A stretch of 63,561 nt of DNA, the filler included, from Octopus bimaculoides (lineage: Eukaryota), in the NCBI RefSeq assembly GCF_001194135.2. It is 6 parts of 6 records of this genome, joined end to end, with 100 filler letters (N's around TTAATTAATTAA, not from the genome) between each part and the next. Parts side by side here need not be neighbours in the genome. Positions count along the whole stretch, not along the records: positions 12,892 to 39,544 come from NC_068989.1; 5 more parts are not named here. One strand, 5' to 3'. Both the position numbers and the translations under genes were made by a program. Numbering within the stretch: the first letter of the stretch is position 1; each line of letters begins with the position of its first letter. Below are positions 7,770 to 39,544 of the stretch, in pieces. The notes below the pieces were generated by a model, which saw nothing but the letters and a program-made list of their open reading frames with translations, was not told the origin of the DNA and made no database searches.

Positions 7770-7812
<43 letters not shown>

Positions 7813-8148: not shown

Positions 8149-8187
<39 letters not shown>

Positions 8188-8358
8188 GGATAGATAGATA
8201 GATAAATAGATAGCTATAAAAATAAGCTGGATAGATTGATAGATACTTAGATAGATAAACAGATATATTATATTATTCTAAATTCCCTAAAGGAAATTAA
8301 TCTATCCACAACGTTTAAGTATGATATCGATATATATATATATATATGATATATTTAC

Positions 8359-8411
<53 letters not shown>

Positions 8412-8426
8412 NNNNNNNNNNAAGAA

Positions 8427-8457
<31 letters not shown>

Positions 8458-8543
8458 CTCATATTTTTGCGTATGAATGTGCATGTATGTGTGTGTGTAT
8501 GTAAATAGATAGACAGATAGATAGATATATATAAGTATATAAG

Positions 8544-8586
<43 letters not shown>

Positions 8587-8602
8587 ATAGATATATAGAT
8601 AG

Positions 8603-8633
<31 letters not shown>

Positions 8634-12539: not shown

Positions 12540-12579
<40 letters not shown>

Positions 12580-12791
12580 TGTGTGATGTTTGTGTGTGGT
12601 GTTTGTATGTGTGTGTGTGTGTGTATGTGTATGACTGGCATCAGGAAATTACAAAACGAACAGCCTGAAGACCATATAATTTTTTGCCATCGCTCTAGAC
12701 AGATATGTATAACAATGTATTTCGAAATTTAAAGCTACAATATTTTAAAATTCTTTTTCTCTTTTATTTTACAACATTTACATAAAAAAAA

Positions 12792-14204: not shown

Positions 14205-14680
14205 TCATCATCATCATCCATTTTCCATGCTGGCATGAGTTGGATGGCTTTTAAAATAACTGGTAAGGATAGGGACTGCATAATGTTCCATAGGCTGTTT
14301 TGGCTTGGTTTCTGTGCTGAACGCCCTTCCTAATACCAACCACTCTACAGAGTGTATTGGGTACGTTTTAAGTGGCACGATCACAGGTGCATTTCCAGTG
14401 TCACCAACCACCAGTGCTTTTTATGTGGCACCTTGGTTTTAGGATCTTAATTCTGTTGTGCTGGGCAGGTCTTTTCAAGTATAGCAATGCACCACATATG
14501 TTGATCCTCTGTCCTCTCCTTTGTAAGGATCAGCATTTTGAGATCAGCTTTCATTACTTCACCCCATGTCTTCCTGGGCCTCCCTCTACTTTAAGTGGCC
14601 AACAAACACTTCTTTATGCAACTGTCCTCATCCATCTACATCACATGACCAGACCAACACAATCTCCTCTTTTGCACTTT
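14205..14680 (-). mobile_element. RTE-family 3' UTR/tail fragment
   Basis: (CAT)n then ttccatgctggcatg...cccttcctaataccaaccactc: reverse complement of the RTE tail. Confidence 0.8.
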
Positions 14681-14820
14681 GCACACACTCGCACACATGC
14701 ATGCAAGCAAACACACACACACACACACACACACGCACGCTCGCACACACGCATGCACGCACGCACACACACACACAAAAACAATTAATTATTTTTGGAT
14801 ATTTCTACGATATGTTGCAG

Positions 14821-15025
14821 TTCTGATAACAACTCAGACCACAGTTATACCACAGAAGTACAAAACATAGGTTCTATGGATGGTGACCAAGCATCAAAGG
14901 GTGTCCCAATGAACAGCAACTCTCAGCCAGCAAATGTAGACAACAGCAATCCTAAGATGAAGACAACCGCAGACCTTCTAAAGGAAGCAGCAAGTAATGG
15001 AAAAAAATACATTGCTGCTGGAATG
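14821..15025 (+). CDS. TTC23: TTC23/TTC23L-like gene, first detectable exon (start codon uncertain; in-frame ATG at 14876)
   Basis: Acceptor ttgcAG at 14819-14820, donor GTattt at 15026. Open frame ...MDGDQASKG...KTTADLLKEAASNGKKYIAAGM; phase 0 end matches the phase 0 start of the next exon. Confidence 0.7.
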
Positions 15026-16223
15026 GTATTTTACTTTTTTAACCATTTGTTTCATTTTATTTTGTTTTATGATATTTTTCCATGCTATTATAAGTTATAA
15101 GGATATGTATTAAGGAACTGTTTTACAGCTGGATACTGTTCCTGTTTGTTTAAATCTTACCTGTTATTCAAGAAACAGATTTTTTTCATTCTGCTTGTTT
15201 TGAAAGTACAGTGCTGAAACATAATTTGTTAGGAAGATTTGTCAGCTGACACCACAAAATTTTGATTTATACTTTCATGCAAGGACACTGAGTGAAATAT
15301 TAACATGAACATAAGCATGCACGCACACATGCATGTATGCACATGCACATGAACACACACGTACACACACACACACACACACACACACTTTCTTTCTCTT
15401 TATTTATGGGTTAACAATGCAAGCAATAATTTCGTGTTCACAATTCACAATTGTTCAAACATACCATGTGGAAGTGTTGGTACTCGTCTCCATTTTGGAT
15501 GAGAAAATGCAACATTATATGAGACTACAGAAGTATCTTAGAAGTATTTTAGAAGCTCGCGAGCTGCAATAATCCTTTTGATTGTTAAATTTTAATTTTT
15601 AATCTTAAATATATTCCCTTAAGTTAGGCATCTATTTCTAGCATTTTAGCTTTTCTACTGACCACTGAACTAATTATTCTTTCTGACCACACTGAACCTA
15701 AAATTCATTTTTTTAATTAACAGCCATAAATACCTTCTTTCTCCATTTTACCAAAACTTTAACCCCTGACCTCTCATCCCAAACCTACCCTAATGAAGAA
15801 TAATACTGGCATCTTATCTCTTATTTTTATGTTTATTTAAAAATTTTTTATTTAACTTTTGCTCTCATTCATTCTTTCTAGCACCTATCTCATTCCTTTC
15901 TTTTCTTTCTTCTATTCACTCATTCACAACCCCTACCTGTCTATCATGATGTCTATCTCTCTCACTTTATACAACCACTTGGACCATTTTCATACTAGCT
16001 CACCGCTTGATCTATCCCTTCAATATGAATGCAACATTCAAAATACTGCCAAAATACTGCCTGAATCTACCTGAGATTATACTTAAGGACCTATAACTTC
16101 ATGGAGGTATGGACCTACCTCCATACCCACTGGAAGAAGATCAGCTGTGAACTTTATTCTCCTATCTTTATTCTTCTATCTACTGTTTTATTCCTTTATA
16201 CACTGTGAATTCTCTATCTAGAA

Positions 16224-16702: not shown

Positions 16703-17593
16703 AACATCATCATCATCATCATTTAACATCTGTTGTCCATGCTGGCATGGGTTGGATGGTTTCACTGGGCTGGCACACTGGAAGGCTGCACCAGGATCCA
16801 GTCTGATTTGGCATGGTTTTCTACAGCCAGATGCCCTTCCTAACGCCAACCACTCTGAAGTGTAATGGGTGCTTTTGTGTGCCACCAGCACAGGTGCCAT
16901 TTGCGTGACACCAGTATCTGTCATGACTGTGATTTTGCTTGGCTTGATGAGTCTTCTTCTCAAGCACAATGTATTGCCAAAGGTCTTGGTCATTGCCTCA
17001 ATACTTGAAAGGAGCTTAGACACTTTGCCTCCATGAGGCCCAATGCTCATAAGGAACTCAGTTGCTTTGCTTCCACAAGGCCTCATGCTCGAAAGGTACT
17101 CAGCCACTTTGCCTCCATGAGACCTGACGTTCAAAGGTTGATCTTTTTACATGCCACCAGCATGGGTGCACTTGGCTTGATGGGTCCTTTTAAAGAGAGC
17201 ACACCACCAAAGGTCTCAGTTACTAGTCATTGCCTCTTTGAGGTTCAAAGTTCAAAGGTCATGCTTCACTGCCTCATCCCATGCCTTCCTGGGTCTACCC
17301 CTATCACTTGTCCCCTCCACAGTTAGAGATCGGCACTTCTTCACACAAGTGTCCTCATCCATACGTATCACATGACTATACCAGCACAGTCGTCTCTCTT
17401 GCATACCACATCTGATTCGTCTTATGCCTAACCTTTCTCTCAAGATGCTTACACTCTGTTGAACATACGTTGCACATCCAGCAAAGTATACTGGCTTCAT
17501 TCTTCTCAAACCTACACATGTCCTCGGCTGTCATAGTCCATGTTTCACTGTCATGCAGCATAGCAGTTCACACACAGGCATTAAACAATCTGC
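16703..17593 (-). mobile_element. RTE LINE 3' fragment (ORF2 C-terminus and UTR)
   Basis: ORFs 17376-17561 (LHDSETW) and 17252-17509 (WYSHVIRMDEDTCVKKC...RGRPRKAW); (CAT)n tail at about 16706-16720. Confidence 0.88.
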
Positions 17594-18149: not shown

Positions 18150-19045
18150 TCCACTGCACATCAAATAATTTGCAATGAGTGCAAAGAAATGGAAATATCT
18201 TGATGAATATATTCGATTTGGATTTGTGTCCCTCCAAAAGGATGACACTGAAGTCCCCCAGTGTGTGATGTGTTACAAAACTCTGAGCCATGATGGAATG
18301 CGACTCTAACGCTTGGAACACTACTTGAGGACAATACATCCTGCTCTTATAGACAAGCCCAAGGCATTCTTTGAAACAAAAAGACATTCCTTGAAGCAAG
18401 CTAAGTTGGACGGTAGTGAGCTATTTCGGCAACAAACTTCAATAGTTATTGAGGCTATGAGATCGCCATGTTGATTGCAAAGAGCAAGAAGAGCCCTAAC
18501 ATCAGAGAGTCTCTCATAAACCAAGACTACTCTGTGCAGAACTCGTTCTGGAGAAAGATGGGGCAAACAAGCTTTCACAGATTTCACTATCAAATGATAC
18601 AGTCAAGGGAAGGATTGATGACTTGTCTCAAGGCATCAAAGATCAAATTCTCGACCAAATAAGAGATTCTCTTGTTTTTACCATTCAGTGTGACGAAACG
18701 GCTGACATTGCTCAGTGTTCTCAGCTACTGGTATATGCTCGTTTTGTGTCAGGCAACTGTGTAAAAGAGATGTTCTGTCACCCTATGGATAATTGTACAA
18801 CAGCAACAGCTATCTTTCGTGATGTATCAAACTTCTTTCAGGAAAACCAACTTTCGTGTGATTCACTGGTAGGGGTGTGCACAGATGAAGCTCCAGCCAT
18901 GCTTGGTCGGCAGTCTGGATTCATGAATAGGGTAAAAGAAAAAAAATCCATCTGTTGTAGGTACACACTACATGCTTCATTGCGAAGCCTCAGCATCCAG
19001 AACCTTACCTACTGAATTGAGAAATTTCCTGAACATGGCTATCAA
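18150..19045 (+). mobile_element. hAT transposase relic, Buster/ZBED5-ZBED8-like
   Basis: BED-finger-like PQCVMCYKTLS, SLSNDTV, IQCDETADIAQCSQLLVYARFV and VCTDEAPAMLG motifs across frameshifted ORFs; cut off by a SINE at about 19050. Confidence 0.88.
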
Positions 19046-20420: not shown

Positions 20421-20974
20421 AGTCATGTCTGTACCTAAGAGGCCATACAGAGAGACTGAACTCAAAACCAATGTGCTTGGGATTTAAACTTCTTAAATGC
20501 ACAACTAGCATGGGAATGCATATATAAAGCATATCCATAAAGTCATGGTGGGTTTCAAAACTATTTATTGATGTAACTTGCAACACTGCACATTTCATAT
20601 ACATGTTGAATAAGAGACCAACTAAAAAGAGTTTGTATACAGTTTAGTGCAGTTCAATGTGGTTTCCATTTGTTGCCCTGCACACATTTAATCAATACCC
20701 CAGTTAGACGAGTATGACTTTATAGACACACTGTATGTGTGTGTGCATATCTGTGTGTCTGTAAGTGCAAGTGTGTGTGCATGTTTGTGTGTCTGTAAAT
20801 ACATGTGTGTTTTTGTGTGTGTGTATATATATATATAGATATATTTAGCTAAATATATCACTGCTCTAATGTTTTAGAGTGTGCTTCTTTTATGGATATA
20901 TGAATTACTGATGATTTATATACATGTGTGTGTATACATATCTATATCTATATCTATCTGTCTGTCTGTCTATT

Positions 20975-21016
<42 letters not shown>

Positions 21017-21255
21017 CACATGTATATAGTAACTCATATATACACTGATCTCATTGTTTTCTTGGAATACAGAATAGTTGGTGCATGACTGGCCATATAG
21101 GTTATGGATATCCAAAGATCAGTGTAGGTGAATATATTCCAAATTATTACACTTTGTGCATCAATGATTTTAGTGTTAAGATATAAAAACAACTTATTGC
21201 AGCTCCAGTGACATGTCATCATGATCGCAGTAATGTTATTCTTTTTTTCTTCCAG

Positions 21256-21379
21256 ATAAATGAAGCCATTCATGAATTCATACGGGCTATGACATTGACA
21301 AGAGTGATATTTGGTTCCATGCACTGGCAGCTGGCTGCCAGTTATGTTTCATTAGCTGAAACCTACCTTCAAGGAAAAG
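21256..21379 (+). CDS. TTC23: TTC23/TTC23L-like exon (TPR region)
   Basis: Polypyrimidine tract plus ccAG acceptor, donor GTatat at 21380. Encodes INEAIHEFIRAMTLTRVIFGSMHWQLAASYVSLAETYLQGK, which matches recalled vertebrate TTC23 ([38 protein letters not shown]). 124 nt, ends in phase 1. Confidence 0.88.
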
Positions 21380-22772: not shown

Positions 22773-22932
22773 GTTTCACTGCCCAGGCAGAATATCATGC
22801 TGAGAGAGCGAAATCTTTGATGCTTGATTCCAATATCCATATTGCTACTAATAATGCTGACAAGTTGTCCATGTACAACATGCTTGTTAATTTACACCAT
22901 ATATTGGCTGTAACAAAATGCTCAGAGAAAAA
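22773..22932 (+). CDS. TTC23: TTC23/TTC23L-like exon ending at a U12-type donor
   Basis: Acceptor tgtAG at 22771-22772; G+GT completes Gly across the phase 1 junction. Encodes GFTAQAEYHAERAKSLML...HHILAVTKCSEK(K), similar to TTC23 GLSLQAKQHAEKARQIL. No GT donor before the in-frame stop at 22943, but ATATCCTTT begins at 22933. Confidence 0.85.
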
Positions 22933-22942
22933 ATATCCTTTT
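22933..22942 (+). other. U12-type (minor spliceosome, AT-AC subtype) 5' splice site
   Basis: ATATCCTTTT matches the RTATCCTTT U12 donor consensus and lies exactly where the TTC23-like reading frame must be interrupted. Confidence 0.8.
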
Positions 22943-23007
22943 TGATAGGCACCAATTTAAAAAAAAAGCTTTTTGTTTGTATTTTGTCAATATTTCTCCG
23001 AGCATAA

Positions 23008-23222
23008 TGGCGGTGAGCTGGTAGAAACGTTAGCATGCTGGGCGAAATGCCTCGCAGTATTTCGTCTGTCTTTACGTTCTGAGCTCAAATTCTGCCGAGG
23101 ACGAATTTGCCTTTCATCCTTTTGGGGTCGATAAATTAAGTACCAGTTGTGTACTGGGGTCAAGCTAATTGACTGGCCCCACCCCAAAAATTTCGAGCTT
23201 TGTGCCTAGAATAGAAAAAAAT
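23008..23222 (+). mobile_element. SINE family A, full length
   Basis: GGCGGTGAGCTGGTAGAAACG A-box, GAGCTCAAATTC B-box, conserved body and A-rich end. Confidence 0.88.
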
Positions 23223-23280
23223 AATTCTCCAAATAAATTAGTTGTTTATTTACACTAGCTTTTATAATATACTATATATT

Positions 23281-23430
23281 TATGTCTTTATTGCCCACAG
23301 GAGGCTAAACATAGAGGGGACAAACAAGGACAGACAAATGTATTAAGGCGATTACATTGACCCTAGTGCATAACTGGTACTTATTCAATCGACCCTGAAA
23401 GGATGAAAGCAAAGTCGACCTCGGCGGAAT
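23281..23430 (-). mobile_element. 5'-truncated SINE family A with 22-bp target-site duplication
   Basis: CTTTTATAATATACTATATATT is present at both 23259-23280 and 23431-23452. Confidence 0.85.
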
Positions 23431-24328
23431 CTTTTATAATATACTATATATTGACACATACAAGACCTGTAATGGAATGGCCAAGAGAATCAAATCCACT
23501 ACTTGACTGGTATATATTTTATTTAGCTGGAAAGGATGAAAGGCAAAGGCTGAATGTGGCTGCCAGAACAAGGAGTGAAACATACTGAATCTGCTAATCT
23601 ATAACATTCTGTAGAAGTATATATTGAAATGAATTAAAAATTGGTGAACTATTTTGCTACCATTGTACCCTCTCACACTGTGTCTCTTTTCTNNNNNNNN
23701 NNTATATATATATATTTATATATATAGTATGTGTGCATATGTATATGTATGTAGGCAATTATGTGGATAAACAAATTAGATATTAAATATAACTGTTTGG
23801 AATGAAATACAAAATATGTATATATGTATACATAGAAAACAAAAGAAAGCAAAATGTGGAGACTTTCAGATGATGAATATTTAAGTATAAATATATAGAT
23901 ATTTATATTAATAGATCCATCTTAGAGTAAAACAACAGGGAAAATTAAAGTCTCCATATTTTGCTTTCTCTCATTTTGCATGTATACATATATAAATATT
24001 TTGTATTTCATACTCCAATTGTTATATTTAATATACCTAATTTGTTTATCCTCATAATTGCCTCTATATCTGCTCAACTTGATCCCTCTTATAACCATTT
24101 TTTACTCCGTGGAATTGACCCCTGTAAAGACATCGGAGTCTAAGTTTGAATCATCTGAGAACTACTAAGTGTCTTCTATACTGAGAATCTCTGGATTTCA
24201 TCTGTGAACTATATGTATATGTGTGTATTTATATGTGTGTGTATGTGTACACATATTCGTATGTGTTTGTGTGGATACATATACTTGTGTTTGTGTACAT
24301 ATGTATGAATAAATGTGTATATACATTA

Positions 24329-24417
<89 letters not shown>

Positions 24418-24749
24418 TTTATGTACCTCTGATGTTATCCCTGGCAATGTGTATCTCTCTTGGACAGTACCCCCTCCACACTTTACATCATTTGTGCTGC
24501 CACTTACCTCCTTCATCCACTCCTAATTTCCTCCATCTCCAGCCTTCCTCTCCAACAAAAAAGGATATTCACAATTGATCATGTGTCCAATCATATTTGC
24601 CATTCACTGATTTCACTTCTATCCCCATCACTATTCTTTCACACTCTTACAGACATAGCTATAACTCACTCTGTCCAATTCCCTATACTAATCATCTCTG
24701 TTTTCTTACTGACATAAACATGTAACTCCTCTACAGCAAAACAGCTGTT

Positions 24750-25060
24750 CCTATCTCTCTGTCATACTTTAACCATTCATCACTTGGCATAAAGCCACCT
24801 CCATCAATTGAGGAGCCCTGTCTTGTGAGTTACTTGGTAACCTCACTAGTGCTGGTGCCACATAAAATGCATCTAGTACACTCAGTAGAGTGGCTGTTAT
24901 TAAGAAGGTCATTCAGCCAGAGAAACTAATGCCAGAGTCTACATTGGGACCTGGTGCAGTCCTCTCACTTGCTAACTTCTCTTGTATAATCCAACCCATG
25001 CCAGCTTGGTAAACAAACATTAAATGGTGATGATGATGCTGATGATAATGATGATAATGA
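24750..25060 (+). mobile_element. RTE-type tail variant ending in (GAT)n
   Basis: gctggtgccacataaaatgca...aacccatgccagc...(tga)n; similar sequence at about 35050-35235. Confidence 0.65.
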
Positions 25061-25199
25061 TAATGTACACACGCGCGCTCATGCACACACACACACACAC
25101 ATACACACACACACACACACATACACACACATCTGTTTAACTCTTTCTCCTTCCTTTGTTGCTCTTCTCAACTTTTGTTCACTCTTGACATTAAAAGTT

Positions 25200-26640
25200 T
25201 GTATACTGTGATCCCACACAATGAAGGACCTCTTGTGTTTAAACACTTCCTTGACCTTTAGTCTGACCCTCAACCTGACGCCTACGCACTTCTTCGTCTG
25301 GCTGAACTTGTCCTCTCCTTTAACTGCTTCTTGTTCACAGGTTAGTTTTACTAACAAGTCTCAGAAGTGGCCATGGGAAAGAGAATGGACTCCAACTATG
25401 CAAGTCTGTTTGGTGGCTACATTAAGGTCCAAATATTCTCACAATTCACTGGTCCCACTCCCAAGCTATATGTTCATTATATCAATGACTGTATTGGCAT
25501 GACCTCACTCTCCCACGAACTACTGGACTTCTTCCTTTCCTTTGTCCAATCCTTCCATCCTGCCTTCAAATTCTCCTGCACTATCTCTAACTCTTCCATC
25601 AAACTTCTCAACATTTTTGTCAGCATACACCACTTCACTCTCGCTAACTTCTTCCACTACAAACACACTGACTCACACTCCTACCTTAACTTCTCCTTAA
25701 CTTCATCTTATGTGGATACCCCACTACTGTTATCCACATTGCCCTTGCCCGAGCATGATCTGTTGACCAGGCCTGTGCTCTTTCTTCTCACACCTGCCCC
25801 ATCCTTACCCATCTCTTATTTCCCTTCACCTAACCCTACCCCTAAATCCTAACCTTACCTCTACATTCTAACCCTAAACTTACCCCTCAAACACACCATT
25901 TTCTGAGCCTCCCAGTGACTGCAGTCCAACCCCTCCACCTTGCACATCTTCCATAACCTACCCCTTCCTTTTTCAAATGAACCCATAACCTGCATGACCA
26001 CCAAGTCCACAGTTTCTTCCCTACCACTGCCTCCCAGCCTGGCTCCTTCCCCTGCTCCTGCTCATGCCGTTGCACTGACCTCTCCAACACCACAAGTCTC
26101 ACTGGCACCCATCACTGTCCCTATCATGTCACTGACTCCTTTACCTGCACCTCTATTAATGTCATTTACTGCATCTCCTGCTCTCTCTGTTCTTCGCTGT
26201 ACATTGAGATGCCGCTTAGCTGACCAGTTTGCAGAGCACCTCCAAGCAAACAAACTCAGCAATGACACCCTGGTCTTGTGCCACTTCCACTGTACCTGTC
26301 ATTTGCTACAACATCTGTCTGTGTTCGGTCTTTCTCTGCATAGAGTCCATCTGGACTCTCGCCTTCGCCGTGAATTAATCTTCTCTTGCCATTTCTTTGC
26401 GCCACATGGGTTCAACTCACTTTATCCAGTCATCTCACCATGTTGGACTGTTGAACTTTGCACAGTTTTTCTTTTCCCATTTTTTCATTGTCTGTCCATT
26501 TTTACATCTTAATCCTTTCTGCCGAAGAGCATTGGCTTGAAACATAAAAGACTTTTCCATTTTTCCAGAGCGTTAAACTAATGCACCTGCTTGTTATTCC
26601 TACACCTGTCTTCGTCTTTTGTTTTCTGTAAATTTGAATT
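25200..26640 (+). mobile_element. Penelope-like element relic (RT, GIY-YIG endonuclease, 3' pLTR)
   Basis: AMGKRMDSNYASLFGGY...HYINDCI...FHPAFKFS...YKHTDSHSYL (PLE RT); FTCTSINVIYCISC and RLADQFAEHL...HF...PHGFN (GIY-YIG); tail with hammerhead-like motif at 26514-26551; ends at (TA)n. Confidence 0.88.
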
Positions 26641-27594
26641 ATATATATATATATATATATATATACAGATATAGGGCAGGGAATTGTCAATTAGTAATAA
26701 AATTAATAATTAACAATTTTGCCAAGTAGTTCAGTATGAAAAAAACCTTTATCGGTAAAACCATTTATAATCATAAATATATAGGGGTCAGCATGAGTTG
26801 CTTCACCATGCTGNNNNNNNNNNNNNNNNNNNNNNNNNNNNNNNNNNNNNNNNNNNNNNNNNNNNNNNNNNNNNNNNNNNNNNNNNNNNNNNNNNNNNNN
26901 NNNNNNNNNNNNNNNNNNNNNNNNNNNNNNNNNNNNNNNNNNNNNNNNNNNNNNNNNNNNNNNNNNNNNNNNNNNNNNNNNNNNNNNNNNNNNNNNNNNN
27001 NNNNNNNNNNNNNNNNNNNNNNNNNNNNNNNNNNNNNNNNNNNNNNNNNNNNNNNNNNNNNNNNNNNNNNNNNNNNNNNNNNNNNNNNNNNNNNNNNNNN
27101 NNNNNNNNNNNNNNNNNNNNNNNNNNNNNNNNNNNNNNNNNNNNNNNNNNNNNNNNNNNNNNNNNNNNNNNNNNNNNNNNNNNNNNNNNNNNNNNNNNNN
27201 NNNNNNNNNNNNNNNNNNNNNNNNNNNNNNNNNNNNNNNNNNNNNNNNNNNNNNNNNNNNNNNNNNNNNNNNNNNNNNNNNNNNNNNNNNNNNNNNNNNN
27301 NNNNNNNNNNNNNNNNNNNNNNNNNNNNNNNNNNNNNNNNNNNNNNNNNNNNNNNNNNNNNNNNNNNNNNNNNNNNNNNNNNNNNNNNNNNNNNNNNNNN
27401 NNNNNNNNNNNNNNNNNNNNNNNNNNNNNNNNNNNNNNNNNNNNNNNNNNNNNNNNNNNNNNNNNNNNNNNNNNNNNNNNNNNNNNNNNNNNNNNNNNNN
27501 NNNNNNNNNNNNNNNNNNNNNNNNNNNNNNNNNNNNNNNNNNNNNNNNNNNNNNNNNNNNNNNNNNNNNNNNNNNNNNNNNNNNNNNNNNNNNN

Positions 27595-28174
27595 TATCTT
27601 TATTATTGTCATTCTGCTTTCTGTGTATGTATGCTTGTAGTTGATACTATTGCGATCATGTGATTGAAATCTGAGCCTGATCACACAATTTTTCTTTCTA
27701 GTTTTACAGTGTAAGCACAGCCACTCCACTAGCAATGTGCACCAAAGAAGAGCAATGCAAAGTGATTTGAGAGATGGTAATGGTGAACCAGTTCACCATT
27801 GCCATCTCTCGAGCTTGCTGAACCTTCTTGTCAGGTTGACAGGCATCCTGCTCCCTCCTTGTGCATCACAATTGTCTGGCCACTTTTAAACTTCTCGATC
27901 TACTCATAGACACTTCTACACAGTAGTGCACTGACCCTGTATTGTGCTGAAAGCCTCCGATGAATTTCAGCACCTGACATACCATTTGACCAGAGAAATT
28001 GGGTCACTGCACTTTGCTCTTCTTTGGTGCACATTGCAAGTGGGATGGCCATGCTTACACTGTAAAGCCTGAAATAAAAATGGCGCAATCAGGCTCACAC
28101 TTTAATCATGTGACCACAATAGTACCAACTATAAGCACACATGTGCAGAAGACAGTGTGACAATAATAAAGATA
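27595..28174. mobile_element. Mariner-derived fold-back palindrome
   Basis: Minus ORF 27900-28088 (CTKEEQSAVTQFLWSNGMSGAEIHRRLSAQY, mariner HTH). 27595-27765 is an inverted copy of 28001-28174; central 20-bp hairpin at 27769-27810. Confidence 0.8.
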
Positions 28175-29099
28175 TGTTACGGTGAAAGTGCAGATAAATT
28201 TTGGCTTCCCCTCGTGACTTCCCCATCAGTGCAGGGATGGATGTATGGTTAAGTAGTTTGCTATTCAATTGTGTAGTTTTGCATTCAGTCTCACTGTGTA
28301 TACATTTCGTGCATATATCTTCGCCTAAAACGTCTAGTAATATCCATTATCTATTCTTTTCACCACTTCTTGAGATTTTGCTGGATTCGAACCTGTTAGG
28401 TGGAGTGTTGTATCACTCTACATAGCAGGGGAATATGTTCATTTATTTAACATTTATCAAGTGAACTCTTCCTTTGGCAAGTATATTGGCTTGTGCCAGA
28501 TGTATAAATTACTCGTTTTAAAGAGTATTAACCTTTTTTTTCTAGTATACTTGTAAGTAAAAGCCAAAGTTCATGGTTCCTGGTTAGAACTGACGGTTTA
28601 CTAATTTATTGGTACAGACATACGTACATACTTAGTTACTTGCATACATACTTATATACATACACATTTACTGTTTACTGCAATAATTTGGTTTGCTAGA
28701 CCACTATAAATTTACTTGAAGTTTGATATAGCTAAGGTTGCTGGTTTGGCTGTCTTCCATCTCCAATCTCTATACAATTCCTATGCTGTACAATCCTCTA
28801 TACAATAAAGGAAAATTTCAGTAGTGCTAAATGCAAACTATTTATTGCAGTATAACTTTAAAGCTACTAAATTATTAGCAAATGCCATCTGCGTGCATTC
28901 AAAGGAAGTGGTCATTTATCTGAGGTGACCAGCTGTACTTTAAGATAAGTTTATGTTTGATAACTTTGTTATGGTGATTACTAATTTTTAATTGCTGCTA
29001 GGCACACCGTATTTTGTTTCTAATCCATAATATACTACAAAGTATTATTAAAGGTTTATGACTCTATCCTGTGACCTACTTTGTGTTAGCAATATGTTG

Positions 29100-29679
29100 G
29101 GATCTATTTTAAAACGGGGGCCACATTTTTCATTAATGTTTTACGTAGTGTTTTTGGTACGGAAAGACTTTCAAACTTCGTATACTTATCTATTTTGTGT
29201 TATAGAACAGAAAAATATTTTTGTATTCGAATTTATTTCATGTAAAAAATTATCTTATTTCGATAATTTCAACCAATCACTGACAAGTATTCAGTTGTTT
29301 ACATTTACTCCTTTGGCTGATTAAGCGATGTAAAGCGTATTTAATCTCCATACCTTCGTTTTATTTGCTTTTTTCATTTTAAATTTGCTTTAACCCTAAC
29401 CCTAACCCTAGGGTTAGGGTTAGGGTTAGGGTTAGGGTTAATTGTTTCAGAATCGTTTGTTTATGTAGTCGGTACTTAATGTATATCGGCTGAATGGACG
29501 TCAGTGATTGGTTGAAATTACAGAAATACGACAACTTTAACATGGAATAACTTATGGATTTCTTTTTTTTTTAAGAAGACTAAGAGAAAAAGATGTTTTA
29601 TATGACACGTTCTACCAGTGTTCCAAGTTTCAAAGTATTTCGTTAATGAAAAATGTGGCCCCCGTTTTAAAAAAGATCC
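29100..29679. mobile_element. Non-autonomous TIR element (580 bp) with 8-bp TSD and central telomeric repeats
   Basis: 37-bp TIRs (36/37 match), TSD ATATGTTG at 29092-29099 and 29680-29687, perfect 21-bp inner IR at 29264-29284/29500-29520, (TAACCC)3-TA-(GGGTTA)5 at 29391-29440. Confidence 0.9.
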
Positions 29680-31271
29680 ATATGTTGTTTTCTTTTTTGA
29701 AGTGTATATCTACAAATATTCTGTAGAATTTAGAGCCAGCACTGAAAATTATGACATTTTATATACGAATATGTCTATGTAAACAATGCAATCAAAAATA
29801 GAAAAATAGGTAATGGGTGTATATGCACATTTCAGGAGTTATTACTCCTTCTTCTTCATCTATGAATACATTGCTTAAATGCCCACTAAGTTTAGTGGTG
29901 TAACACTATTGGATAGACCAATCAACGCATTAAACATATTCCTGGCAACTGGTATGTTGATATTAATTGCTGGTAGGGACACTGTGTTTCCTTTCTGCAA
30001 CCATAATACATTACCAAGTATATTAACAGTTTATAAGTCAATACTGTGTCCTACTTTTGTGTTAGCAATGTGTTATTTTGATTTTTAAGTGGACTCTAAA
30101 GCAATGAGTATGGTGGTGATGATGATGATGATGTTGTTGATGCCCTTCCTGTCACCACCCCTGGCTTGTTTTACATGCAAGGAACTTCTTATTTAACACA
30201 TTTTTCAAGGCACATAGCCAGTGTAATTCAGAGATTTTCAGAGAAGCATAAATGTAAATGATCCCACAGGCACTTCACATGCACATAAACACATGCACAA
30301 GCATACCTATGTGTGTGTGCATATATATATATGTGTGTATGTATGTATTATATTTGTATATACTGTATATACTGGTGTACAGGATGGAACTTTAAAAAAA
30401 TTTCCCCAAGATTAGGAGTTGTCTTATATACCCCATATAAAGTTTGAATCTTAACTTCCTGTGGTTTAGAGTAGCTGTGTATATTTTAAGCTGTAAAACC
30501 TTCTATTTATAAATGTTCTAAAATATATACAGCCTTGGTTTTTTTAATCTCATTATGAAAAGTAAATCCTTATATTCACACACTGATATATGACCTACGT
30601 TAGACCCCTTATTCGCATAATCACTGAACCTGGAGCTTAACTATGGTCTATTCTTAGCACTTACTCAGCATTATCTGAAACCTCTGGGTCTAATTGACAC
30701 CACTACTGCTCATAACCGCTCTATATATATATTGTTTTTTTGGGGATGGTCATGTTACCAGTTTAGCCAATAAAAACACACGCAGTATATATTTAGTGTT
30801 AATTTGCTTCAGCTTTATTTTATTTTTTACATTAATCGTATTTCGGCCAGAGTTCTTTTGTCACACTCCTATGACCTCATCAGTGGTCTTTTGCTTTCTT
30901 CTTTCTTATTTGTGTGTCTTTCCTTACTAACGATCAGCCATTTTGTATTTTGTATTCCTATTGTATGTGTCTTTATTTGCACATGTGTATACCCCTATGT
31001 GTGTCTATGTTTAGTAAGTGCATGTGTGTGTGTGTCGAGGGGAGTGCCTGTATTATCTGTATCCCCTGTTTATACACGTTCGTTTAATTTGTTTTTATTT
31101 ATTTTGTTCATGTGTTTATACCTACTTTTTTCTATTCTTTCCTTTCTTTGTATTTAATTTAATTTAATTTTGTTAACGTATATAGTTATTTAATTCCATT
31201 TGTTTATCTGTGTATTGTATTATATTTTGTTCATATTGTTATCAGTTTATGGGGATCTTATATAAACATAT

Positions 31272-31316
<45 letters not shown>

Positions 31317-32439
31317 AATACATGTATGTATGTGTGTATTTGGGATAGATCTCTTTCAGCTTTCATCTGCCAAATCCACTCAGAATGTTTTGGTTGGCAC
31401 AGAGCTATAGGAGAAGACATGCCTAAGTGTGTAGTGGGACTAGCTTGAAACCACATTGCTTGGAAGAAAGCTTCTTAATTGAAAGCCATTCTTAGATTTG
31501 CATACCTAAGTTCATGGGATTTATTGAGCTTTGTATTATTTTATGGAAAGTTTTGCACAGGAAAGCAATTTTGTGCCATATTTGATTTAGCTAAATTCTT
31601 AAAACTTTGTAAATATCAAGCAATCTGTCTATGACTCAAAGCAATGTTTTTAGATGCCATATAAATGGTAATACTGATCATTGTAATGTTTTAAGTGAAA
31701 GCTTAATCCTGATTCTTAATACTGATAAATGTTGTAATTGAAGTTTGGTTAGATTCTGAATATCTAGATGCTTTACTACAAGTTCACACCTGACTTACAT
31801 TCTGAGATGTAATTCAGCTGGCATTATGTTAATACTAGCTGATGTACCTGGTAATTCCCAGGAAAGCGGAGCTTATCCCTTGGTTCCGTTCTCATAATTG
31901 TTTCACTAATCCAATAACAATACAGAGTATGTAGCCCTTAAAATGGTTTTTGGGCATTTACAGAGAATAACGAACTGTCTTACACAGGATCTTGTTTTTA
32001 GGAATTCCAAATAAGTTATGGATACCCAAATTGTTAAGTCAGTTATGTGATAACATGAAATTAGTTACTCTATTGTAAGAATTCAAATAAAGTCGCCCCC
32101 AAAAGGGCTTTAATGGGTTCCCAGAGTATATAGAACTTAAGAGAAAATACTAATAAGGTATGTATACTAAAATTGTGAAGCATGTTATGTAATAACAGGC
32201 TAATCAGATATGAGATAATAACAATTGAATGTAAATAACTTTGAAATGGGCTTTTGTGCATTCCCAGAGAATGCGGCACTAGTGTTGGTATATTCATGAA
32301 TAAGTTACTAACTGAAATAAGTGGATTTATTGTTTAGGAAAATGCTATTTACTTGTTTAAGGGTTGTACTGGATAAATTACGAAAATAACTCTAGCAGTT
32401 CAAATACTAAGAAATAAGCATACTCAATTTGATTTATAC

Positions 32440-32745
32440 CAAATGATTTCGGAAAATGAATAGTTTATTTCCTTTGGCTGTTAAAATCTGGGCGAATGGG
32501 TTATTTCCTTTGGCTGTTAAAATGAAATATATAAGATATATATATATAAGATATATATATATAAGGATCCCTTCCAGGGGCGCTAGTATCGATATTTTCA
32601 ACAATCTGAGTATGCCATGTGGTTTCCAGACATGAGTTCTACTCACGTGTCAAGTTTCATCAAAATCGATAAAACGATGTAGGAGGAGTTAGTTAATAAC
32701 TCCACAAACACACTCACAGACAGAATTTCTCACATATGTAGTAGG
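32440..32745 (+). mobile_element. Non-autonomous Helitron/DINE-1(HINE)-like element
   Basis: 3' motif aagtttcatcaaaatcg...gtaggaggagtt...acaaacacactcacagacag typical of DINE-1/Lep1-type elements; short internal duplication tt(a)tttcctttggctgttaaaat. Confidence 0.5.
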
Positions 32746-33269
32746 TTTTTAAGAATATTCATCTACCTTTGGCATCTCTGAATAAACTGTTATAAACAGC
32801 AAATCAGTGTAAAATTTCTTGGAATTCTACTAAGGTTATCCAGAAATTGATGTTTAGTTAACAGTATCATAAAGGGGAAAAAATGTCAACTGGTTTGTTA
32901 TTGCTAAATATTGTACTGATATATGGAGTGATTTTTTTCTGTTCACTGTAATAGCAAATACAATACATAAAAAGTGGAATTGGTTACTCAGAGAGAGTTT
33001 GAGTTAAGAAAAGTTTTCATAGTAAAAGTACATTTCTGAAATGGGTGTGGTATGGTTGTATAGTTATGAAGTTCACGTGGTTCTGGGTTTCATCTCATTA
33101 TGTGGGATCTTGGGCAAGTGTCTTCTACCAGAACATATGATCAACTAATGCCTTGTATATGGAATTTTGGTTGATGGAGACAATGCAGAAGCCTGGCATA
33201 TGCATACATACATACATACATACATACATACATACATACTCACTCACACACATGCACACACACTCACAG

Positions 33270-33307
<38 letters not shown>

Positions 33308-33311
33308 TTAT

Positions 33312-33480
33312 GCTTGTAATTAGTGGGGCACTGGGATATTTATCACACTGTCTAAATACCAATCTTGAGAAATTAGGCTTCTCAAAACAAGAAAGGAGAA
33401 AGCTGCTTCGAAGACTACAGATCCAAGCAATCACTGGAAGTGTAAAAATCTGTAAAACTTTCCAGAATTTTATCATTTAA
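33312..33480 (+). mobile_element. C-terminus of an RLE-type non-LTR retrotransposon
   Basis: ISGALGYLSHCLNTNLEKLGFSKQERRKLLRRLQIQAITGSVKICKTFQNFII* resembles the end of restriction-like endonuclease ORFs. Confidence 0.65.
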
Positions 33481-34094
33481 GTATATATGTGCATGTCTAG
33501 ACATGCAGCTATATGCAGGAGAGTACATACATAAAGCAAAACATACAAATCTGCACAGACATACAAAAATGCCCTGTTGATATTATTGAAATTTCAATGA
33601 AGGAGGCTTGGATCTAGGTTAGAAACTGGCTCTTTCTCTATTGGCAAAAAAAATCTTGAAATAAAACTGTGTATGTATAGGCACAGACATGGCTGTGTAG
33701 TTGAAGTCCTTACTTCCCAATGATGTGACCTCGGGTTCAGTGCCACTGTATAGGATTTTGGGCAAGTATCTTCTACTATAGCCCCAGACTGACCAAAGCC
33801 TTATGAGTGGATTTGGTGGACAGAAACTGAAAGAAACCTGTTGTGTGTGTGTTGTGCTCTTGTCTTGATGTCATCTGATGGTTTTAAATGAGCATCATCT
33901 TTGTTGATTTGCAGTTTTCAGTGAAAAATAATCATTAACCATATGAAACACTATTTTACTTGGAAACGTATGAAGGTTAGCATCAGGAAGAGCATCTACC
34001 CATAGAATAGCTGCCTCAACAAACTCTGTTTGACCTATGTGAGCATGGCAAAGTGGATTTTAAATGACAATGAAACAGCTTTGTTTACAAAAGA

Positions 34095-34310
34095 GAAAAC
34101 TGTGCTGGTCATGTGAAGCATATAGATGAAGAAAGCAGTATAAAGAAGTACTTATCAGTCAAAGTGGGTGGAACTTGTGGAAGAGGGAAATCCAAAAACA
34201 CATGGATAAAGTAGAGGAGGCTAGTCTCAGGATGTTGAGCTTCACAGTGGAGATGACAAAGGACTGAGATGATTGACAATTTGTTCTGCTCAAGAAGACG
34301 TGTCTGTCAC
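34095..34310 (+). mobile_element. Degenerate RTE ORF2 C-terminal fragment
   Basis: Decayed GHVxxMDE...VGGTCGRGK..TW motif. Confidence 0.5.
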
Positions 34311-35923
34311 AGTGAGAGCTAGGTCCTAAAAGCGTTATGTTTATGTCAATATATTTTTTGGACTCTGCATCTGTACCTACTCTGTCTCCATGTAACCTTT
34401 CCCACCTCTCATCTTTCTAACATCCATCTCTCCATCACTCTTTCAACTAACGCATTATCCATTTGCTGCAATCATATGCCAGCTGAATCTGTACATACTT
34501 ATCAGTTACCAAAACACTTCTCTCTAGAACAACTTCTTTTTGTAATCCATCTCTTATTTTCAATATAATACCTTCCCACTCTAATTTGTTGACAACTTTC
34601 TGTGCCTCCAGTTTTCTTTTCCTCTCCTCTGAGCTACATTTCAGTACTGTTATACCTCATCTTTAAAACTTTCTTATATCAATTATCATTCTCAACACCT
34701 TGGACATCTGTTGTCAACAGCTCTCGCACTTTTATATTCACTCCCTACAGCTATTTATGTATATCCCTGACTTCCATCTCTGTCACTGTACATATCTCTC
34801 TCTCTCTCTCTCTCTGTACATCTCTTCTCCCCACACTCCCACCTTACACATCATCTTCCTATTTTCTGATCTATGTACAGTAACTTGCCACCTTTCCTGA
34901 ACTGCTTCTTACTATTTCCTCCTTTCTGAGCTATTCCTATATCTTTCAATCAACCTCATCAACCATTTTGGTCATCCTTCCAGTGACTACCACCTACCCT
35001 TATATACTGCAAGTTAACCATGTTTCCCCTTTGTGGCAAGACACTTGTGCCTGTCCCACTATCATACTTTAAACTCTCACCACCTTGCCTAAAGCCACCA
35101 ACCTACTACAACCTTACATAGTCAAGAGATATTTTCTTTGTTTTGTGAGTTACTCAATGACCTTACTAGTGCTGGTGTTATGGGAAAAGCACCCTGTATA
35201 CTCTGTAAAGTGGTTAGTATCAATGGTGTATGGTGGTTGTTGTATTGAGTGTGCTGTCACACTCAGTGCCACCAAATTTCAAGCACGGCTGTAACAAAAG
35301 TTTTCCATTAAGATTTGGGATTAAATTAATGAGTAAGGTTAATATTTATAATGAATTTGCCATTTTCAGTGGATGTACGGTGCACACCTAGCACACCCAG
35401 AATATATGCCTCTGGTTAGTATTCGGAAGTGCATCCAGCCATAGAAACCATACTAATCATCCTTGCACAGTGATTTTGTTTAAATTGAAGAAAAGCTGTG
35501 CTCTGTCAACCCCACTCTCTCGCCTGCAATCATCTTCAAAATGACTTAGGATGGAGATGGATACAGTAGATGACTAAGAGGATTTACTTGCCCCATCTTG
35601 CTCTGTGCACTACACAATGGATTGTGATTGCCTTTCTCACCATAATGGGTTTTTCTCCAGAGTCCACTGGATCCAGTTTTCACATGCAATAGGCGAGTAA
35701 GTCTTAACATGCTAATTACCCATAACTGGGACTCTGATGGGTGCTACAACTCTGGGTTTGAGTGACCTGGGAACAATAGTGGCTAAGAGGTGTTTCCACA
35801 CTCCTCAAAACCATGGAACTCTCAAACTGGGGCTCCACTACTAGACACAGTTTGAAGTCATACCCAGGACATACACGCATGCACGCACACACACGTGCAC
35901 ATACACTCACACACATATATTTA

Positions 35924-35924
<1 letters not shown>

Positions 35925-35965
<41 letters not shown>

Positions 35966-36345
35966 CAACAGTAATATCTGTTTTCTATGCTGGCATGGGT
36001 TGAACTGCTTGATAGGAACTAGCCAGGCCAGGGGTTGTACCAGGTTCCATAGTCTCTTTTGGCTTGGTTTCTATGGCTGGATACCCTTCCTAATGCCAAC
36101 CACTTTACAGAGTGTACTGGGTGCTTTGTACATGGAACCAGCACCCACACTAATGCTTTTTATGTGGCACCTTGGTTTTAGGATCTGAATTCTGTTGTGG
36201 TGGGTGGGTCTTCATGAGTACAGCAGTGCACCACATATCTCAGTCCTCTGTCATCTTCTTCATATGGCTCTGCGTTTTGAGATCAGCCTTCATTATTTCA
36301 GCCCATGTCTGCCTGGGTCTCCCTCTTCCATAACATCCTTCCACA
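35925..36345 (-). mobile_element. RTE-family tail/3' UTR fragment
   Basis: (CAT)n then ctatgctggcatggg...cccttcctaatgccaacc; closely similar to 14205-14680. Confidence 0.8.
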
Positions 36346-37353
36346 TTTTTTTACACACAAACACAGGCACATGCATAAAACTCATGCATCCATACACACA
36401 CATACATTATGTTCATGTATTTATGCATGTTTCTGTTGGTGAAGTATGTAAAACGTATGGAGAAAACTGAGAAACTCTTCCTTCTGGATAAAATTATCAA
36501 TTGTGATATTTGTTCCCTCCCAATACTTGGTCATTTTTATTGTTAGAAATGCAGGGAGTCATAGATTGACCTGTTAGAAACGTGTAATTGTGTAAATTCT
36601 TGTTCACCAAATACTCTATAAAATTAACATTGAAAGGACATTAAATTTGAGATAACTTTGCTATGTTGGGACAGAGGTTATTACAAATAAGGTGACATTT
36701 ACAAATTTGCTTTTCAGGTTTTCAAAACAAATAAAGCTACAGACTATAAATAATGGGCAATTTTGATGTAGCTTCTGTAAATGGTTGGAACATAGATATG
36801 ATTATATGACTAGCTTAAATATAAATGTTATAAAATGGGACTACAAGCTGAAATGAATAAAATGTTTTCAGATGGAATTTAGGTAGTATTGCTAAGTATA
36901 GTTATTTCATGGAAACTTAATACTAAAATATTGTGTTTGTATAGTATTTAGTTGGGTCTACCGGAAAATTTATTACAAAATTTGGATATAATTTATTCAA
37001 ATGGGATTTAATTGTTTTATTAAATGTCTATTGTGAGTATTTATGCATTTTGATGATCTGATTTCATGACAAATTTCGAGAAAGGTATTCTTCATTCAGA
37101 AAATGTGAATACATACATACATACATACATACATACATACATGCATGCATGCATGCATACATACATACAAACAAACAAAACACGAATATACACAATGTAT
37201 GTATGTGTGTGTGCATACACATATGTGGGGTTTCTGCATGCGTAGACACATTTACACAGAGACACCTGCTTAAATGGAATATTATATACCCACATGTACA
37301 TACCAACATATTAAAGAATATTCTCTTATACATACATTCACAGAAATTTCTTT

Positions 37354-37384
<31 letters not shown>

Positions 37385-37387
37385 ATG

Positions 37388-37421
<34 letters not shown>

Positions 37422-37707
37422 TAAAATAGAAATATTTTTATTTCTAAATCTTTCAAAGTAAAGGCTATTTGCCAAGATAATGTGGCTATCCCGAAAGGGA
37501 TGATGTTACTGTTGTTTTAGTCCCAAGAAACATTGGTTCTAGCTGGCTAAATGACACTATCTGTGTCCTTATATTTTCGAACAGAGCTCTCAGCATTCCC
37601 ATCATGTGCAAAACAACATCTGTGGACTAATTTCTGGGTTATTGCCCTTTATCAACGCAGAGTAGCTGCTTTAGCCAGATGGTGCTGATGATTTCACCTT
37701 CCGAATA

Positions 37708-39099
37708 CCGTAAAATCTCATGTAATTTGTGCACCTGTGTAATTTACACAGGTGATTTTCTAGATAAAAATTGTTAAAAAAAGCTTCTACTCATGTAAAA
37801 TTTGCACACAAAAGTTTTCAGAATTGCTGATATAGCCAGGGTGTAAAGGTTTCCTGTTTAGTTGTATTTAGCCTAATTTCACTTATTAAATTTTCATTAA
37901 ATAAAAATAATTTCTGTTTAACATGTATCACATTGAAAGCTATTAAATTACGAAGTGTTTGTGTTGTTTATAATAAACTTTATTTTACATTTCTTGCCCG
38001 CAAGAGATTGTTGTCTGATCTTTAGCATACTTCTGTATGTTTTCTCAAATCACGATCACAGGAAAAGTCGTTGATAATTCTTATCAACAAAGACAAAGCT
38101 GATAAGTATGCACAAGTCTTGCAAAATAAGTTTAATAACCAATAAACATCAGCTTGGTTGACACTTTACTCAACCAACAGAAGAAGGTGACTGATCAAAC
38201 TGATTATGTAAGCAGAATCCTGATTGGTTAAAAGTGTCTTCTTGTCTCAAGCTCTAATTTTCCACCTATTCTTGTTAGAACCTTTGATAGAGAGTATCAA
38301 AATTTAAACCCTTTCACACTTATAAAATGTCAAGCAAACCTTAAAATTTGTCATTACTGTTTTAGCCAGGAGACCAAACTGATAGTTTGGTAACCCACTA
38401 AAATAAACATTAAAAATTGAAAGGAGAAAATAAACAGCTTTGCTTGTTTAACTCAGTGCTTATTGAACAAAAGAGGTGCGAAATTTAAGAAGTGACTTGT
38501 TAGAATATACACGTCTGTGAGGAGACATAAACAAGAATAGCAAAAATCTATTTTTCCAAAAGAACTGGTAATACATACATAACAAGTGTTCTATGAAAAG
38601 AACAAAATTGCTGCATAATTCAACATGAATGTGAAATGACATTAAACATTGTTTAAGGTAAATGAAGGTTTCTGTAGGAACATTAAGTCATATTTACTTA
38701 GTGAGTTTACATGTGCAAGGATGAATTATGATGTTGTTGTCGGCATTACATGCAGTAAAATATGGCCCAGATAGTGATTACCTGCAAGAACATCAAACTT
38801 CAAGAAGTAGTTAACCATGTAATAGTTTTAGTAAATATATACAGAAAAAGTAAGCATTATACTGTCCAGCATAAATAAAAGTTAACTTTATTATTTTTTC
38901 TGTAAAAAAACCTATTCTGACATTAAATGAGTCAACTTCCGGTATGAATATTTACATTTGTATGATTTGTATGTCATTTCTCAACTTTAAAATTTCGAAA
39001 AAATACTGGAAATGATCTTCTCATGTAATTTACGCACCCACAAAAGTTTTTTTTTTGTTTTTGTGAAAGAAAGTGCATAAATTACATGGGTTTTTATGG
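37708..39099. mobile_element. Non-autonomous TIR element, Tc1/mariner-pogo-like, about 1.4 kb
   Basis: Left ta|CCGTAAAATCTCATGTAATTTGTGCAC; right end reverse-complements to CCATAAAAACCCATGTAATTTATGCAC. No ORF recognised inside. Confidence 0.6.
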
Positions 39100-39190
39100 C
39101 GTATACTTTTCCAGGTGACACACAACCACTGATCAAAAAATAGAAATATTATTTCTAAATCTCTCAAAGAGAGACAATCAACGTATATCA

Positions 39191-39544
39191 TTCCAGGGTG
39201 AAAAACTAGAGGTAGTCGATAGCTTCCGCTATCTGGGCGACTAAGTTAGTAGTGGGGGTGGGTGCGCTGAAAGTGTAGCTGCTAGAATAAGAATAGCCTG
39301 GGCAAAGTTTAGAGAGCTCTTACCCCTGCTGGCGACAAAAGGACTCTCACTCAGAGTAAAAGGCAGACTGTATGACGCATGCGTACGAACAGCCATGCTA
39401 CATGGCAGTGAAACATGGGCTGTAACTGCTGAGGACATACGTAAGCTCGCAAGGAATGAAGCCAGTATGCTCCGTTGGATGTGTAATGTCAATGTGAATA
39501 CCCGTCAGAGTGTAAGTATCTTGAGAGAAAAGCTGAACATTAGA
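39191..39544 (+). mobile_element. RTE ORF2 fragment running into the scaffold end
   Basis: KLEVVDSFRYLG...LHGSETWAVTAED; highly similar to 54547-54905. Confidence 0.9.

What the first reader, a model, noticed from the sequence alone, without database searches (positions are those of the whole stretch)
22933..22945. AT-AC minor-spliceosome intron in a TTC23-like gene
Seen: the TTC23-like frame has no GT donor before a stop, but a perfect U12 donor ATATCCTTT begins at 22933, splitting a Lys codon in phase 2. If the intron is retained the protein reads KKYPF and stops at 22943-22945. Established: RTATCCTT donors define rare U12 introns, which are spliced slowly and are often positionally conserved. 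Inference: this may be a deeply conserved U12 intron. I found no TCCTTAAC branch point plus AC acceptor and matching exon up to the end of this assembly piece (39544), so the intron is either very long and TE-filled, or the next exon lies in a gap or another piece.
Basis: partly seen in the sequence, partly recalled or inferred. Interest (0 to 1): 0.7.

Follow-up and report, generated by a model that had tools for sequence, protein, structure and literature searches.

The report
Conserved U12 intron in octopus TTC23
The motif is the start of a real minor-spliceosome (U12-type, AT-AC) intron in the octopus TTC23 gene, at the same codon position as the U12 intron of vertebrate TTC23, so it is an ordinary, well-understood feature.

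Summary
ATATCCTTT starts at 22933, right after coding exon 22773-22932. It splits a Lys codon after two bases, and read-through gives KKYPF then TGA at 22943-22945.

The piece is Octopus bimaculoides TTC23: RefSeq XP_014777218.1 is 100% identical over the window's exons. That protein does not stop here. It continues KK-YVESEKNLLKAESF…, and this exon is not in the sequenced part of the piece. The gene spans 182.6 kb, so the intron is over 16.6 kb unless the exon sits in the 781-N gap.

Orthologous loci settle the type. At the same alignment column and phase:
- **AT-AC U12 introns:** Argonauta, a hemichordate and a lamprey, each with a TCCTTRAC-like branch site 9-13 nt from the 3' end.
- **GT-AG U12 introns:** amphioxus and Tasmanian devil, with perfect TCCTTAAC.
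- **U2-type intron:** Priapulus.
- **No intron:** two bivalves.

Human TTC23 is used in the literature as a model minor intron, and its published RT-PCR primers flank this column.

The octopus 3' end could not be examined. This is a textbook conserved U12 intron already implied by existing annotation, so interest is low.

The parts
14821..15025 (+). TTC23 coding exon, aa 29/30-97 of XP_014777218.1. Acceptor ttgcag|T, donor ATG|GTATTT.
   Evidence: tblastn of P0001 gave 98.6% identity. Boundaries were read from the sequence.
21256..21379 (+). TTC23 coding exon, aa 98-138 plus the first base of G139. Acceptor ttccag|ATA, U2-type donor G|GTATAT, phase 1.
22773..22932 (+). TTC23 coding exon, the last two bases of G139 through the first two bases of K192. 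Acceptor tgtgtag|GT. It ends ...GAG AAA AA.
   Evidence: 100% identity to P0001 aa 139-193. Sequence read.
22933..22941 (+). U12-type AT-AC 5' splice site ATATCCTTT (first bases of the intron).
   Evidence: The orthologous donors [AG]TATCCTTT sit at the same codon position in five other species.
22943..22945 (+). In-frame TGA, reached only if the intron is retained (…KKYPF*).
22933..39544 (+). Sequenced part of the U12 intron, at least 16.6 kb, repeat-rich. It holds N gaps at 23693-23702 and 26814-27594. The branch site, 3' splice site and next exon are not in it.
   Evidence: tblastn and word searches with P0001 found nothing downstream. The gene spans 182.6 kb. Repeats are shown.

Best explanation
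Positions 22933-22941 are the 5' splice site of a U12-dependent (minor-spliceosome) intron of the AT-AC subtype in the Octopus bimaculoides TTC23 gene.

**Proposed mechanism.** U11 snRNA pairs with ATATCCTT. U12 pairs with a TCCTTRAC-like branch site about 10-15 nt upstream of a terminal AC that lies beyond this piece. Exon 22773-22932 is then joined to an exon beginning [A/G]TATGT…, which restores Lys192-Tyr193-Val194.

**Evolutionary status.** The intron is orthologous to the U12 intron of vertebrate TTC23 and predates the protostome-deuterostome split. Its subtype has switched between AT-AC and GT-AG in different lineages. It appears to have been converted to U2-type in Priapulus and lost in bivalves.

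**Shown:** the donor motif, its position and phase, gene identity, continuation of the protein, and complete U12 introns at the same site in five other animals.

**Inferred:** the octopus branch site and AC terminus, and actual dependence on the minor spliceosome in octopus.
For: - **Donor, phase and stop** were read directly.
- **Gene identity:** the window's exons are 100% identical to XP_014777218.1, 'tetratricopeptide repeat protein 23 [Octopus bimaculoides]', and the protein continues …SEKKYVESEKNLLKAESF….
- **O. sinensis** ortholog reads …SGKRYEESEKNLL…, which fits the same phase-2 split.
- **Argonauta hians L001:** caa|ATATCCTTTT … TCCTTGAC-13nt-AC|ATATTCTGAC. This gives K-YSDSEEHLIKAED, homologous to the octopus K-YVESEKNLLKAES.
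- **Glandiceps L004:** AT-AC, TCCATGAC-13nt-AC.
- **Branchiostoma L003:** GTATCCTTTT … TCCTTAAC-11nt-AG.
- **Lamprey L007:** ATATCCTTTC … TTCTTGAC-9nt-AC.
- **Sarcophilus L008:** GTATCCTTTT … TCCTTAAC-9nt-AG.
- **Position:** all split residues fall in column 255 of alignment A1, all in phase 2.
- **Human:** TTC23 is called a well-characterised model minor intron that is retained on RNPC3 knockdown. Its primers translate to ARQILA and SKELLQC, which flank column 255 (PMC12332006).
- **Machinery in the lineage:** minor introns are catalogued in Octopus sinensis, and molluscs are relatively rich in them (PMC10639083).
Against: - The octopus branch site, 3' terminal dinucleotide and next exon are not in the piece, so the AT-AC pairing in octopus itself is unverified. 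A non-canonical 3' end cannot be excluded.
- No transcript reads were available. The junction rests on a computational RefSeq model plus homology.
- If the next exon starts ATAT, as in Argonauta, the mRNA junction is ambiguous by 4 nt. It is placed at 22932|22933 only because of the U12 consensus.
- The 9-mer alone is not statistically unusual in the window.
Confidence: 0.93

Rival explanations
1. The exon is a terminal exon. The mRNA normally reads through ATATCCTTT and ends with …KKYPF*, giving a short TTC23 protein of about 197 aa, or this is an intron-retention isoform of functional importance.
For: The stop codon comes only 11 nt into the putative intron. An AATAAA lies at 23232. U12 introns are known to be spliced slowly and often retained (established knowledge; human TTC23 retention on RNPC3 knockdown in PMC12332006).
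Against: The RefSeq proteins of O. bimaculoides and O. sinensis continue for 270 more residues that are conserved across animals. Isoform X2 differs elsewhere, at aa 397-423. The donor motif is conserved in six lineages. The YPF read-through is not followed by an early stop in Argonauta or Branchiostoma.
Confidence: 0.04
2. The exon is spliced by the major (U2) spliceosome from a GT inside the exon, for example GTAACA at 22910. The ATATCCTTT would then be a chance match in intronic sequence.
For: GT dinucleotides exist in the exon. The 9-mer frequency in the window is compatible with chance.
Against: The residues after 22910 (…VTKCSEKK) are in the RefSeq protein and align with conserved residues in all orthologs. 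The motif starts at exactly the orthologous intron position and phase. The chance of this 9-mer at one given position is about 1e-5 (my estimate from base composition).
Confidence: 0.02
3. It is a U12-type donor, but in octopus it pairs with a non-AC 3' end (for example AT-AG or AT-AA), or the next exon lies hidden in the 781-N gap so the intron is short (about 4 kb).
For: The 3' end was not observed. The gap at 26814-27594 could hold an exon of about 130 nt. Non-canonical U12 termini are documented (PMC10639083).
Against: The closest relative examined, Argonauta, has a canonical AC with a good branch site. A gene span of 182.6 kb with about 12 coding exons in both octopus species makes introns over 16 kb the norm.
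Confidence: 0.1

Closest known systems
U12-type (minor-spliceosome) intron of vertebrate TTC23, used as a 'model' minor intron in human (PMC12332006)
   Same: Same gene family. Same codon position (alignment column 255) and same phase 2. Same [AG]TATCCTTT donor. In Sarcophilus TTC23 the intron is complete, with TCCTTAAC 9 nt before AG.
   Different: The marsupial and amphioxus versions are the GT-AG subtype and short (183 and 550 nt). The octopus version is the AT-AC subtype at its donor and over 16.6 kb. The exact human junction was not inspected here; only the primer positions were.
AT-AC U12 intron of Argonauta hians TTC23-like (locus L001 6020-10355)
   Same: Donor 10-mer ATATCCTTTT is identical to the octopus one. 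Same split Lys codon. The downstream exon starts A TAT… and encodes the homologous K-Y-x-[ED]-S-E motif.
   Different: It is 4.3 kb and complete in the locus. The deposited gene model (GAB1603543.1) does not use it and forces a GT-AG pair instead.
U2-type intron at the same site in Priapulus caudatus TTC23-like
   Same: Same position and phase.
   Different: AG|GTAAGC…CAG termini with no U12 donor or branch motif. This is a likely U12-to-U2 conversion, a well-known fate of minor introns (established knowledge).

Membership tests
U12-type (minor) spliceosomal intron, AT-AC subtype | 5' splice site matching /[AG]TATCCTT directly at the exon end | tested here: met
   ATATCCTTT at 22933-22941, immediately after the last base that matches the RefSeq protein register.
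U12-type (minor) spliceosomal intron, AT-AC subtype | Branch-point sequence TCCTTRAC about 8-20 nt upstream of the 3' splice site | not testable with these tools
   The 3' end of the octopus intron lies outside the piece, and the genomic DNA could not be fetched because the gene is longer than 100 kb. The feature is met in the orthologous introns of five species.
U12-type (minor) spliceosomal intron, AT-AC subtype | Terminal AC dinucleotide paired with the initial AT | not testable with these tools
   Same reason. AC is present in Argonauta, Glandiceps and lamprey. Amphioxus and Sarcophilus have AG with a GT donor.
U12-type (minor) spliceosomal intron, AT-AC subtype | The exon is actually joined to a downstream exon at this point | tested here: met
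   This is indirect. XP_014777218.1 and XP_029641422.2 continue K-Y-[VE]-E-S-E-K-N-L-L…, homologous to the next exon in other species. No RNA reads were examined.
U12-type (minor) spliceosomal intron, AT-AC subtype | Removal depends on U11/U12/U4atac/U6atac snRNPs | not testable with these tools
   Retention on RNPC3 knockdown is reported only for human TTC23 (PMC12332006).
Ortholog of the vertebrate TTC23 minor intron | Same alignment column and same phase as the vertebrate intron | tested here: met
   Column 255 of A1, phase 2, in lamprey and Sarcophilus TTC23 and in octopus.
TTC23 protein family | Significant full-length sequence similarity to proteins named TTC23 | tested here: met
   100% to O. 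bimaculoides TTC23 (E=4e-54 over 95 aa). There are 27 hits at E<=1e-10; those whose source names were looked up are TTC23 or TTC23-like, from oyster, amphioxus, lamprey and mammals. Pfam gives only a weak TPR_12 match.

The most novel reading that the evidence does not exclude
The stop codon only 11 nt into this slowly spliced, very long U12 intron might be used in octopus as a regulated switch. Retention, or polyadenylation near 23232, would produce a truncated N-terminal TTC23 of about 197 aa instead of the full 462 aa protein. Nothing here supports this beyond the geometry.
Probability: 0.04. Interest if true: 0.3.

Novelty: already known. Interest (0 to 1): 0.15.

Why it matters
Its value is mainly as quality control.

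It also documents that one orthologous minor intron has persisted at the same codon from cephalopods to mammals. Along the way it has switched AT-AC/GT-AG subtype, converted to U2-type in a priapulid, and been lost in bivalves. These are all textbook patterns of minor-intron evolution.

A practical by-product is that gene predictors restricted to GT-AG mis-model this site. The Argonauta hians model is an example.

Tried and rejected
- **Word-indexed protein searches.** Two searches, with the single exon and with two joined exons, found nothing. The exhaustive HMMER search was needed.
- **Downstream branch sites.** I scanned for TCCTTAAC-like sites followed by AC or AG. The only perfect TCCTTAAC, at 25694, is not followed by a matching exon, and the weaker sites at 30449 and 35702 likewise.
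- **Locating the next exon.** I ran tblastn with a human TTC23 sequence recalled from memory (used only as a lead) and with P0001, P0002 and P0004. Only the three upstream exons match and nothing follows 22936. A 4-residue word search for the next exon in six frames gave scattered chance hits only.
- **Fetching octopus genomic DNA.** This failed for both O. bimaculoides and O. sinensis because the gene range exceeds 100 kb.
- **Primate loci.** Look-ups with P0024 and P0017 failed because those isoforms are not on record.
- **Rfam.** The scan of the piece found nothing.
- **Pfam on transposon-like ORFs.** This gave only a weak DUF4371 hit.
- **TTC23L.** The vertebrate paralogue was not examined because the look-ups were exhausted.

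Full report
**Observation.** Around the finding the + strand reads …TGC TCA GAG AAA AA|A TAT CCT TTT TGA TAG…. ATATCCTTT occupies 22933-22941. The preceding reading frame (…LHHILAVTKCSEKK) splits its last Lys codon after two bases. Read-through gives KKYPF followed by TGA at 22943-22945.

The statement 'no GT donor before a stop' holds for the last 35 nt only. GTs occur inside the exon at 22864, 22867, 22873, 22886 and 22910. The 9-mer by itself is not remarkable: it occurs twice on both strands of the window against 0.52 expected, and 11 of 100 shuffles reached that count. What makes it meaningful is where it sits.

**Gene identity and model.** Two word-indexed searches found nothing. An exhaustive HMMER search with the two joined exon peptides returned a 462-aa protein that is 100% identical over all 95 residues (P0001, E=4e-54). 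Its sources name it 'tetratricopeptide repeat protein 23 [Octopus bimaculoides]', XP_014777218.1.

tblastn of P0001 places three coding exons in the piece:
- 14821-15025, aa ~30-97.
- 21256-21379, aa 98-138, with U2-type donor G|GTATAT in phase 1.
- 22773-22932, aa 139-192.

After K192 the protein continues YVESEKNLLKAESFLENLKKLPSS… for 270 more residues. None of this is encoded anywhere in 22946-39544 on either strand. The gene spans 182.6 kb in the chromosome assembly, and 182.4 kb in O. sinensis. An intron over 16.6 kb is therefore unremarkable for this gene. The 781-N gap at 26814-27594 could in principle hide the exon, and I could not exclude that.

**Orthologous loci.** The octopus 3' end was unreachable, so I examined the same junction in other animals whose genes were short enough to fetch. 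Coordinates are, and the sequences were read.

| Species (locus) | Intron | Length | Termini and branch site | Type |
|---|---|---|---|---|
| Argonauta hians (L001) | 6020-10355 | 4336 nt | cacaa\|ATATCCTTTT … TCCTTGAC +13 nt … AC\|ATATTCTGAC | AT-AC U12 |
| Glandiceps talaboti, hemichordate (L004) | 13692-15780 | 2089 nt | ATATCCTTTA … TCCATGAC +13 nt … AC | AT-AC U12 |
| Branchiostoma belcheri (L003) | 4087-4636 | 550 nt | GTATCCTTTT … TCCTTAAC +11 nt … AG | GT-AG U12 |
| Lethenteron reissneri, lamprey TTC23 (L007) | 3450-3964 | 515 nt | ATATCCTTTC … TTCTTGAC +9 nt … AC | AT-AC U12 |
| Sarcophilus harrisii, mammalian TTC23 (L008) | 4878-5060 | 183 nt | GTATCCTTTT … TCCTTAAC +9 nt … AG | GT-AG U12 |
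| Priapulus caudatus (L005) | 12100-12599 | 500 nt | ag\|GTAAGCAC … CATCAG\| | U2 |
| Magallana gigas (L002) | none, exon 4385-4681 | – | region encoded in one exon | no intron |
| Solemya velum (L006) | none, exon 6016-6306 | – | region encoded in one exon | no intron |

The Argonauta junction gives K-YSDSEEHLIKAED, which is collinear with the octopus K-YVESEKNLLKAES.

In a ten-species protein alignment, the split residue falls in the same column (255) in every species, and always in phase 2.

**Literature.** A 2025 paper lists human TTC23 among 'well-characterised model minor introns' and reports that it is retained on RNPC3 knockdown (PMC12332006). Its RT-PCR primers translate to ARQILA and SKELLQC, which lie 38 residues before and 15 residues after the column-255 lysine. 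A pan-eukaryotic survey includes Octopus sinensis and Priapulus among species with catalogued minor introns, and notes relative enrichment in molluscs (PMC10639083).

**Interpretation.** 22933 is the 5' splice site of an ancient U12-dependent intron. It was present before protostomes and deuterostomes diverged and is retained as U12-type in cephalopods, a hemichordate, amphioxus, lamprey and a mammal. Changes of subtype (AT-AC versus GT-AG), apparent conversion to U2-type in a priapulid, and loss in bivalves are the standard fates of such introns (established knowledge). The mechanism is the textbook one: U11 pairs with the donor, U12 pairs with the branch site, and U4atac/U6atac·U5 carry out catalysis.

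Shown: the motif, its position and phase, gene identity, continuation of the protein, and complete U12 introns in orthologs. Inferred: the octopus branch site and AC, and dependence on the minor spliceosome in octopus.

**Rivals.**
- A terminal-exon or retention isoform ending KKYPF* is contradicted as the normal product by the conserved 270-residue continuation. Occasional retention cannot be excluded without RNA data.
- Use of an internal GT would delete conserved residues that are present in the RefSeq protein.
- A non-AC 3' terminus, or an exon hidden in the N gap, remains possible but would not change the classification.

**Novelty.** None of substance. The class is textbook, the human ortholog is a standard assay intron, and the RefSeq octopus model already splices across this site. 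Interest is low.

Noticed in passing
L001 6020-6036 and 10356-10373 (Argonauta hians, GAB1603543.1): The deposited Argonauta gene model reads through the U12 donor (…HKYPFTHS) and forces a GT-AG pair (TCA|GTGGTT … GAAGAG|CATCTG). This replaces the true K-YSDSEE with K-YPFTHS. It looks like an annotation artefact from not allowing AT-AC introns. The model is also truncated at 314 aa, although exons homologous to octopus aa 322-451 lie at L001 17256-17432, 19050-19202 and 21828-21914.
   Followed up: partly
L004 13692-13697 and 15781-15786; L001 6020-6023 and 10356-10359: In Glandiceps the first six bases of the intron and of the downstream exon are identical (ATATCC). In Argonauta the first four are identical (ATAT). 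The octopus RefSeq protein (K-Y-V) implies the same ATAT/GTAT start. The mRNA junction is therefore ambiguous by 4-6 nt and is placed only by the U12 consensus.
   Followed up: no
window 23111-23174 and 23346-23409: Two inverted copies, 64 nt and 81% complementary, of a short interspersed-repeat-like element lie just inside the intron. From memory, they resemble the abundant octopus SINE; this was not tested.
   Followed up: no
window 17252-17561 (-) and 39395-39544 (+): Two related ORF fragments, …HDSETWTMTAEDMCRFEKNEASILCWMCNV… and …HGSETWAVTAEDIRKLARNEASMLRWMCNV…SVSILRE…, look like tails of the same retroelement family in opposite orientation. There was no Pfam hit.
   Followed up: partly
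window 18623-19015 (+): An ORF in the upstream intron has a weak DUF4371 match (E=0.0012, below the Pfam cut-off). It may be a decayed DNA-transposon remnant, which is my guess and was not tested.
   Followed up: partly
window 24205-24428; also 14640-14790, 20690-21050, 33170-33320, 37090-37430: Long (AT)n and (CA/TG)n-rich microsatellite tracts are scattered through the introns. They generate many spurious Cys/Val/His/Thr-rich ORFs.
   Followed up: no
L002 4385-4681 and L006 6016-6306: Both bivalves examined, the oyster and the protobranch Solemya, lack the intron entirely. The upstream phase-1 intron (K-G|x) is kept. This suggests loss early in bivalve evolution.
   Followed up: partly
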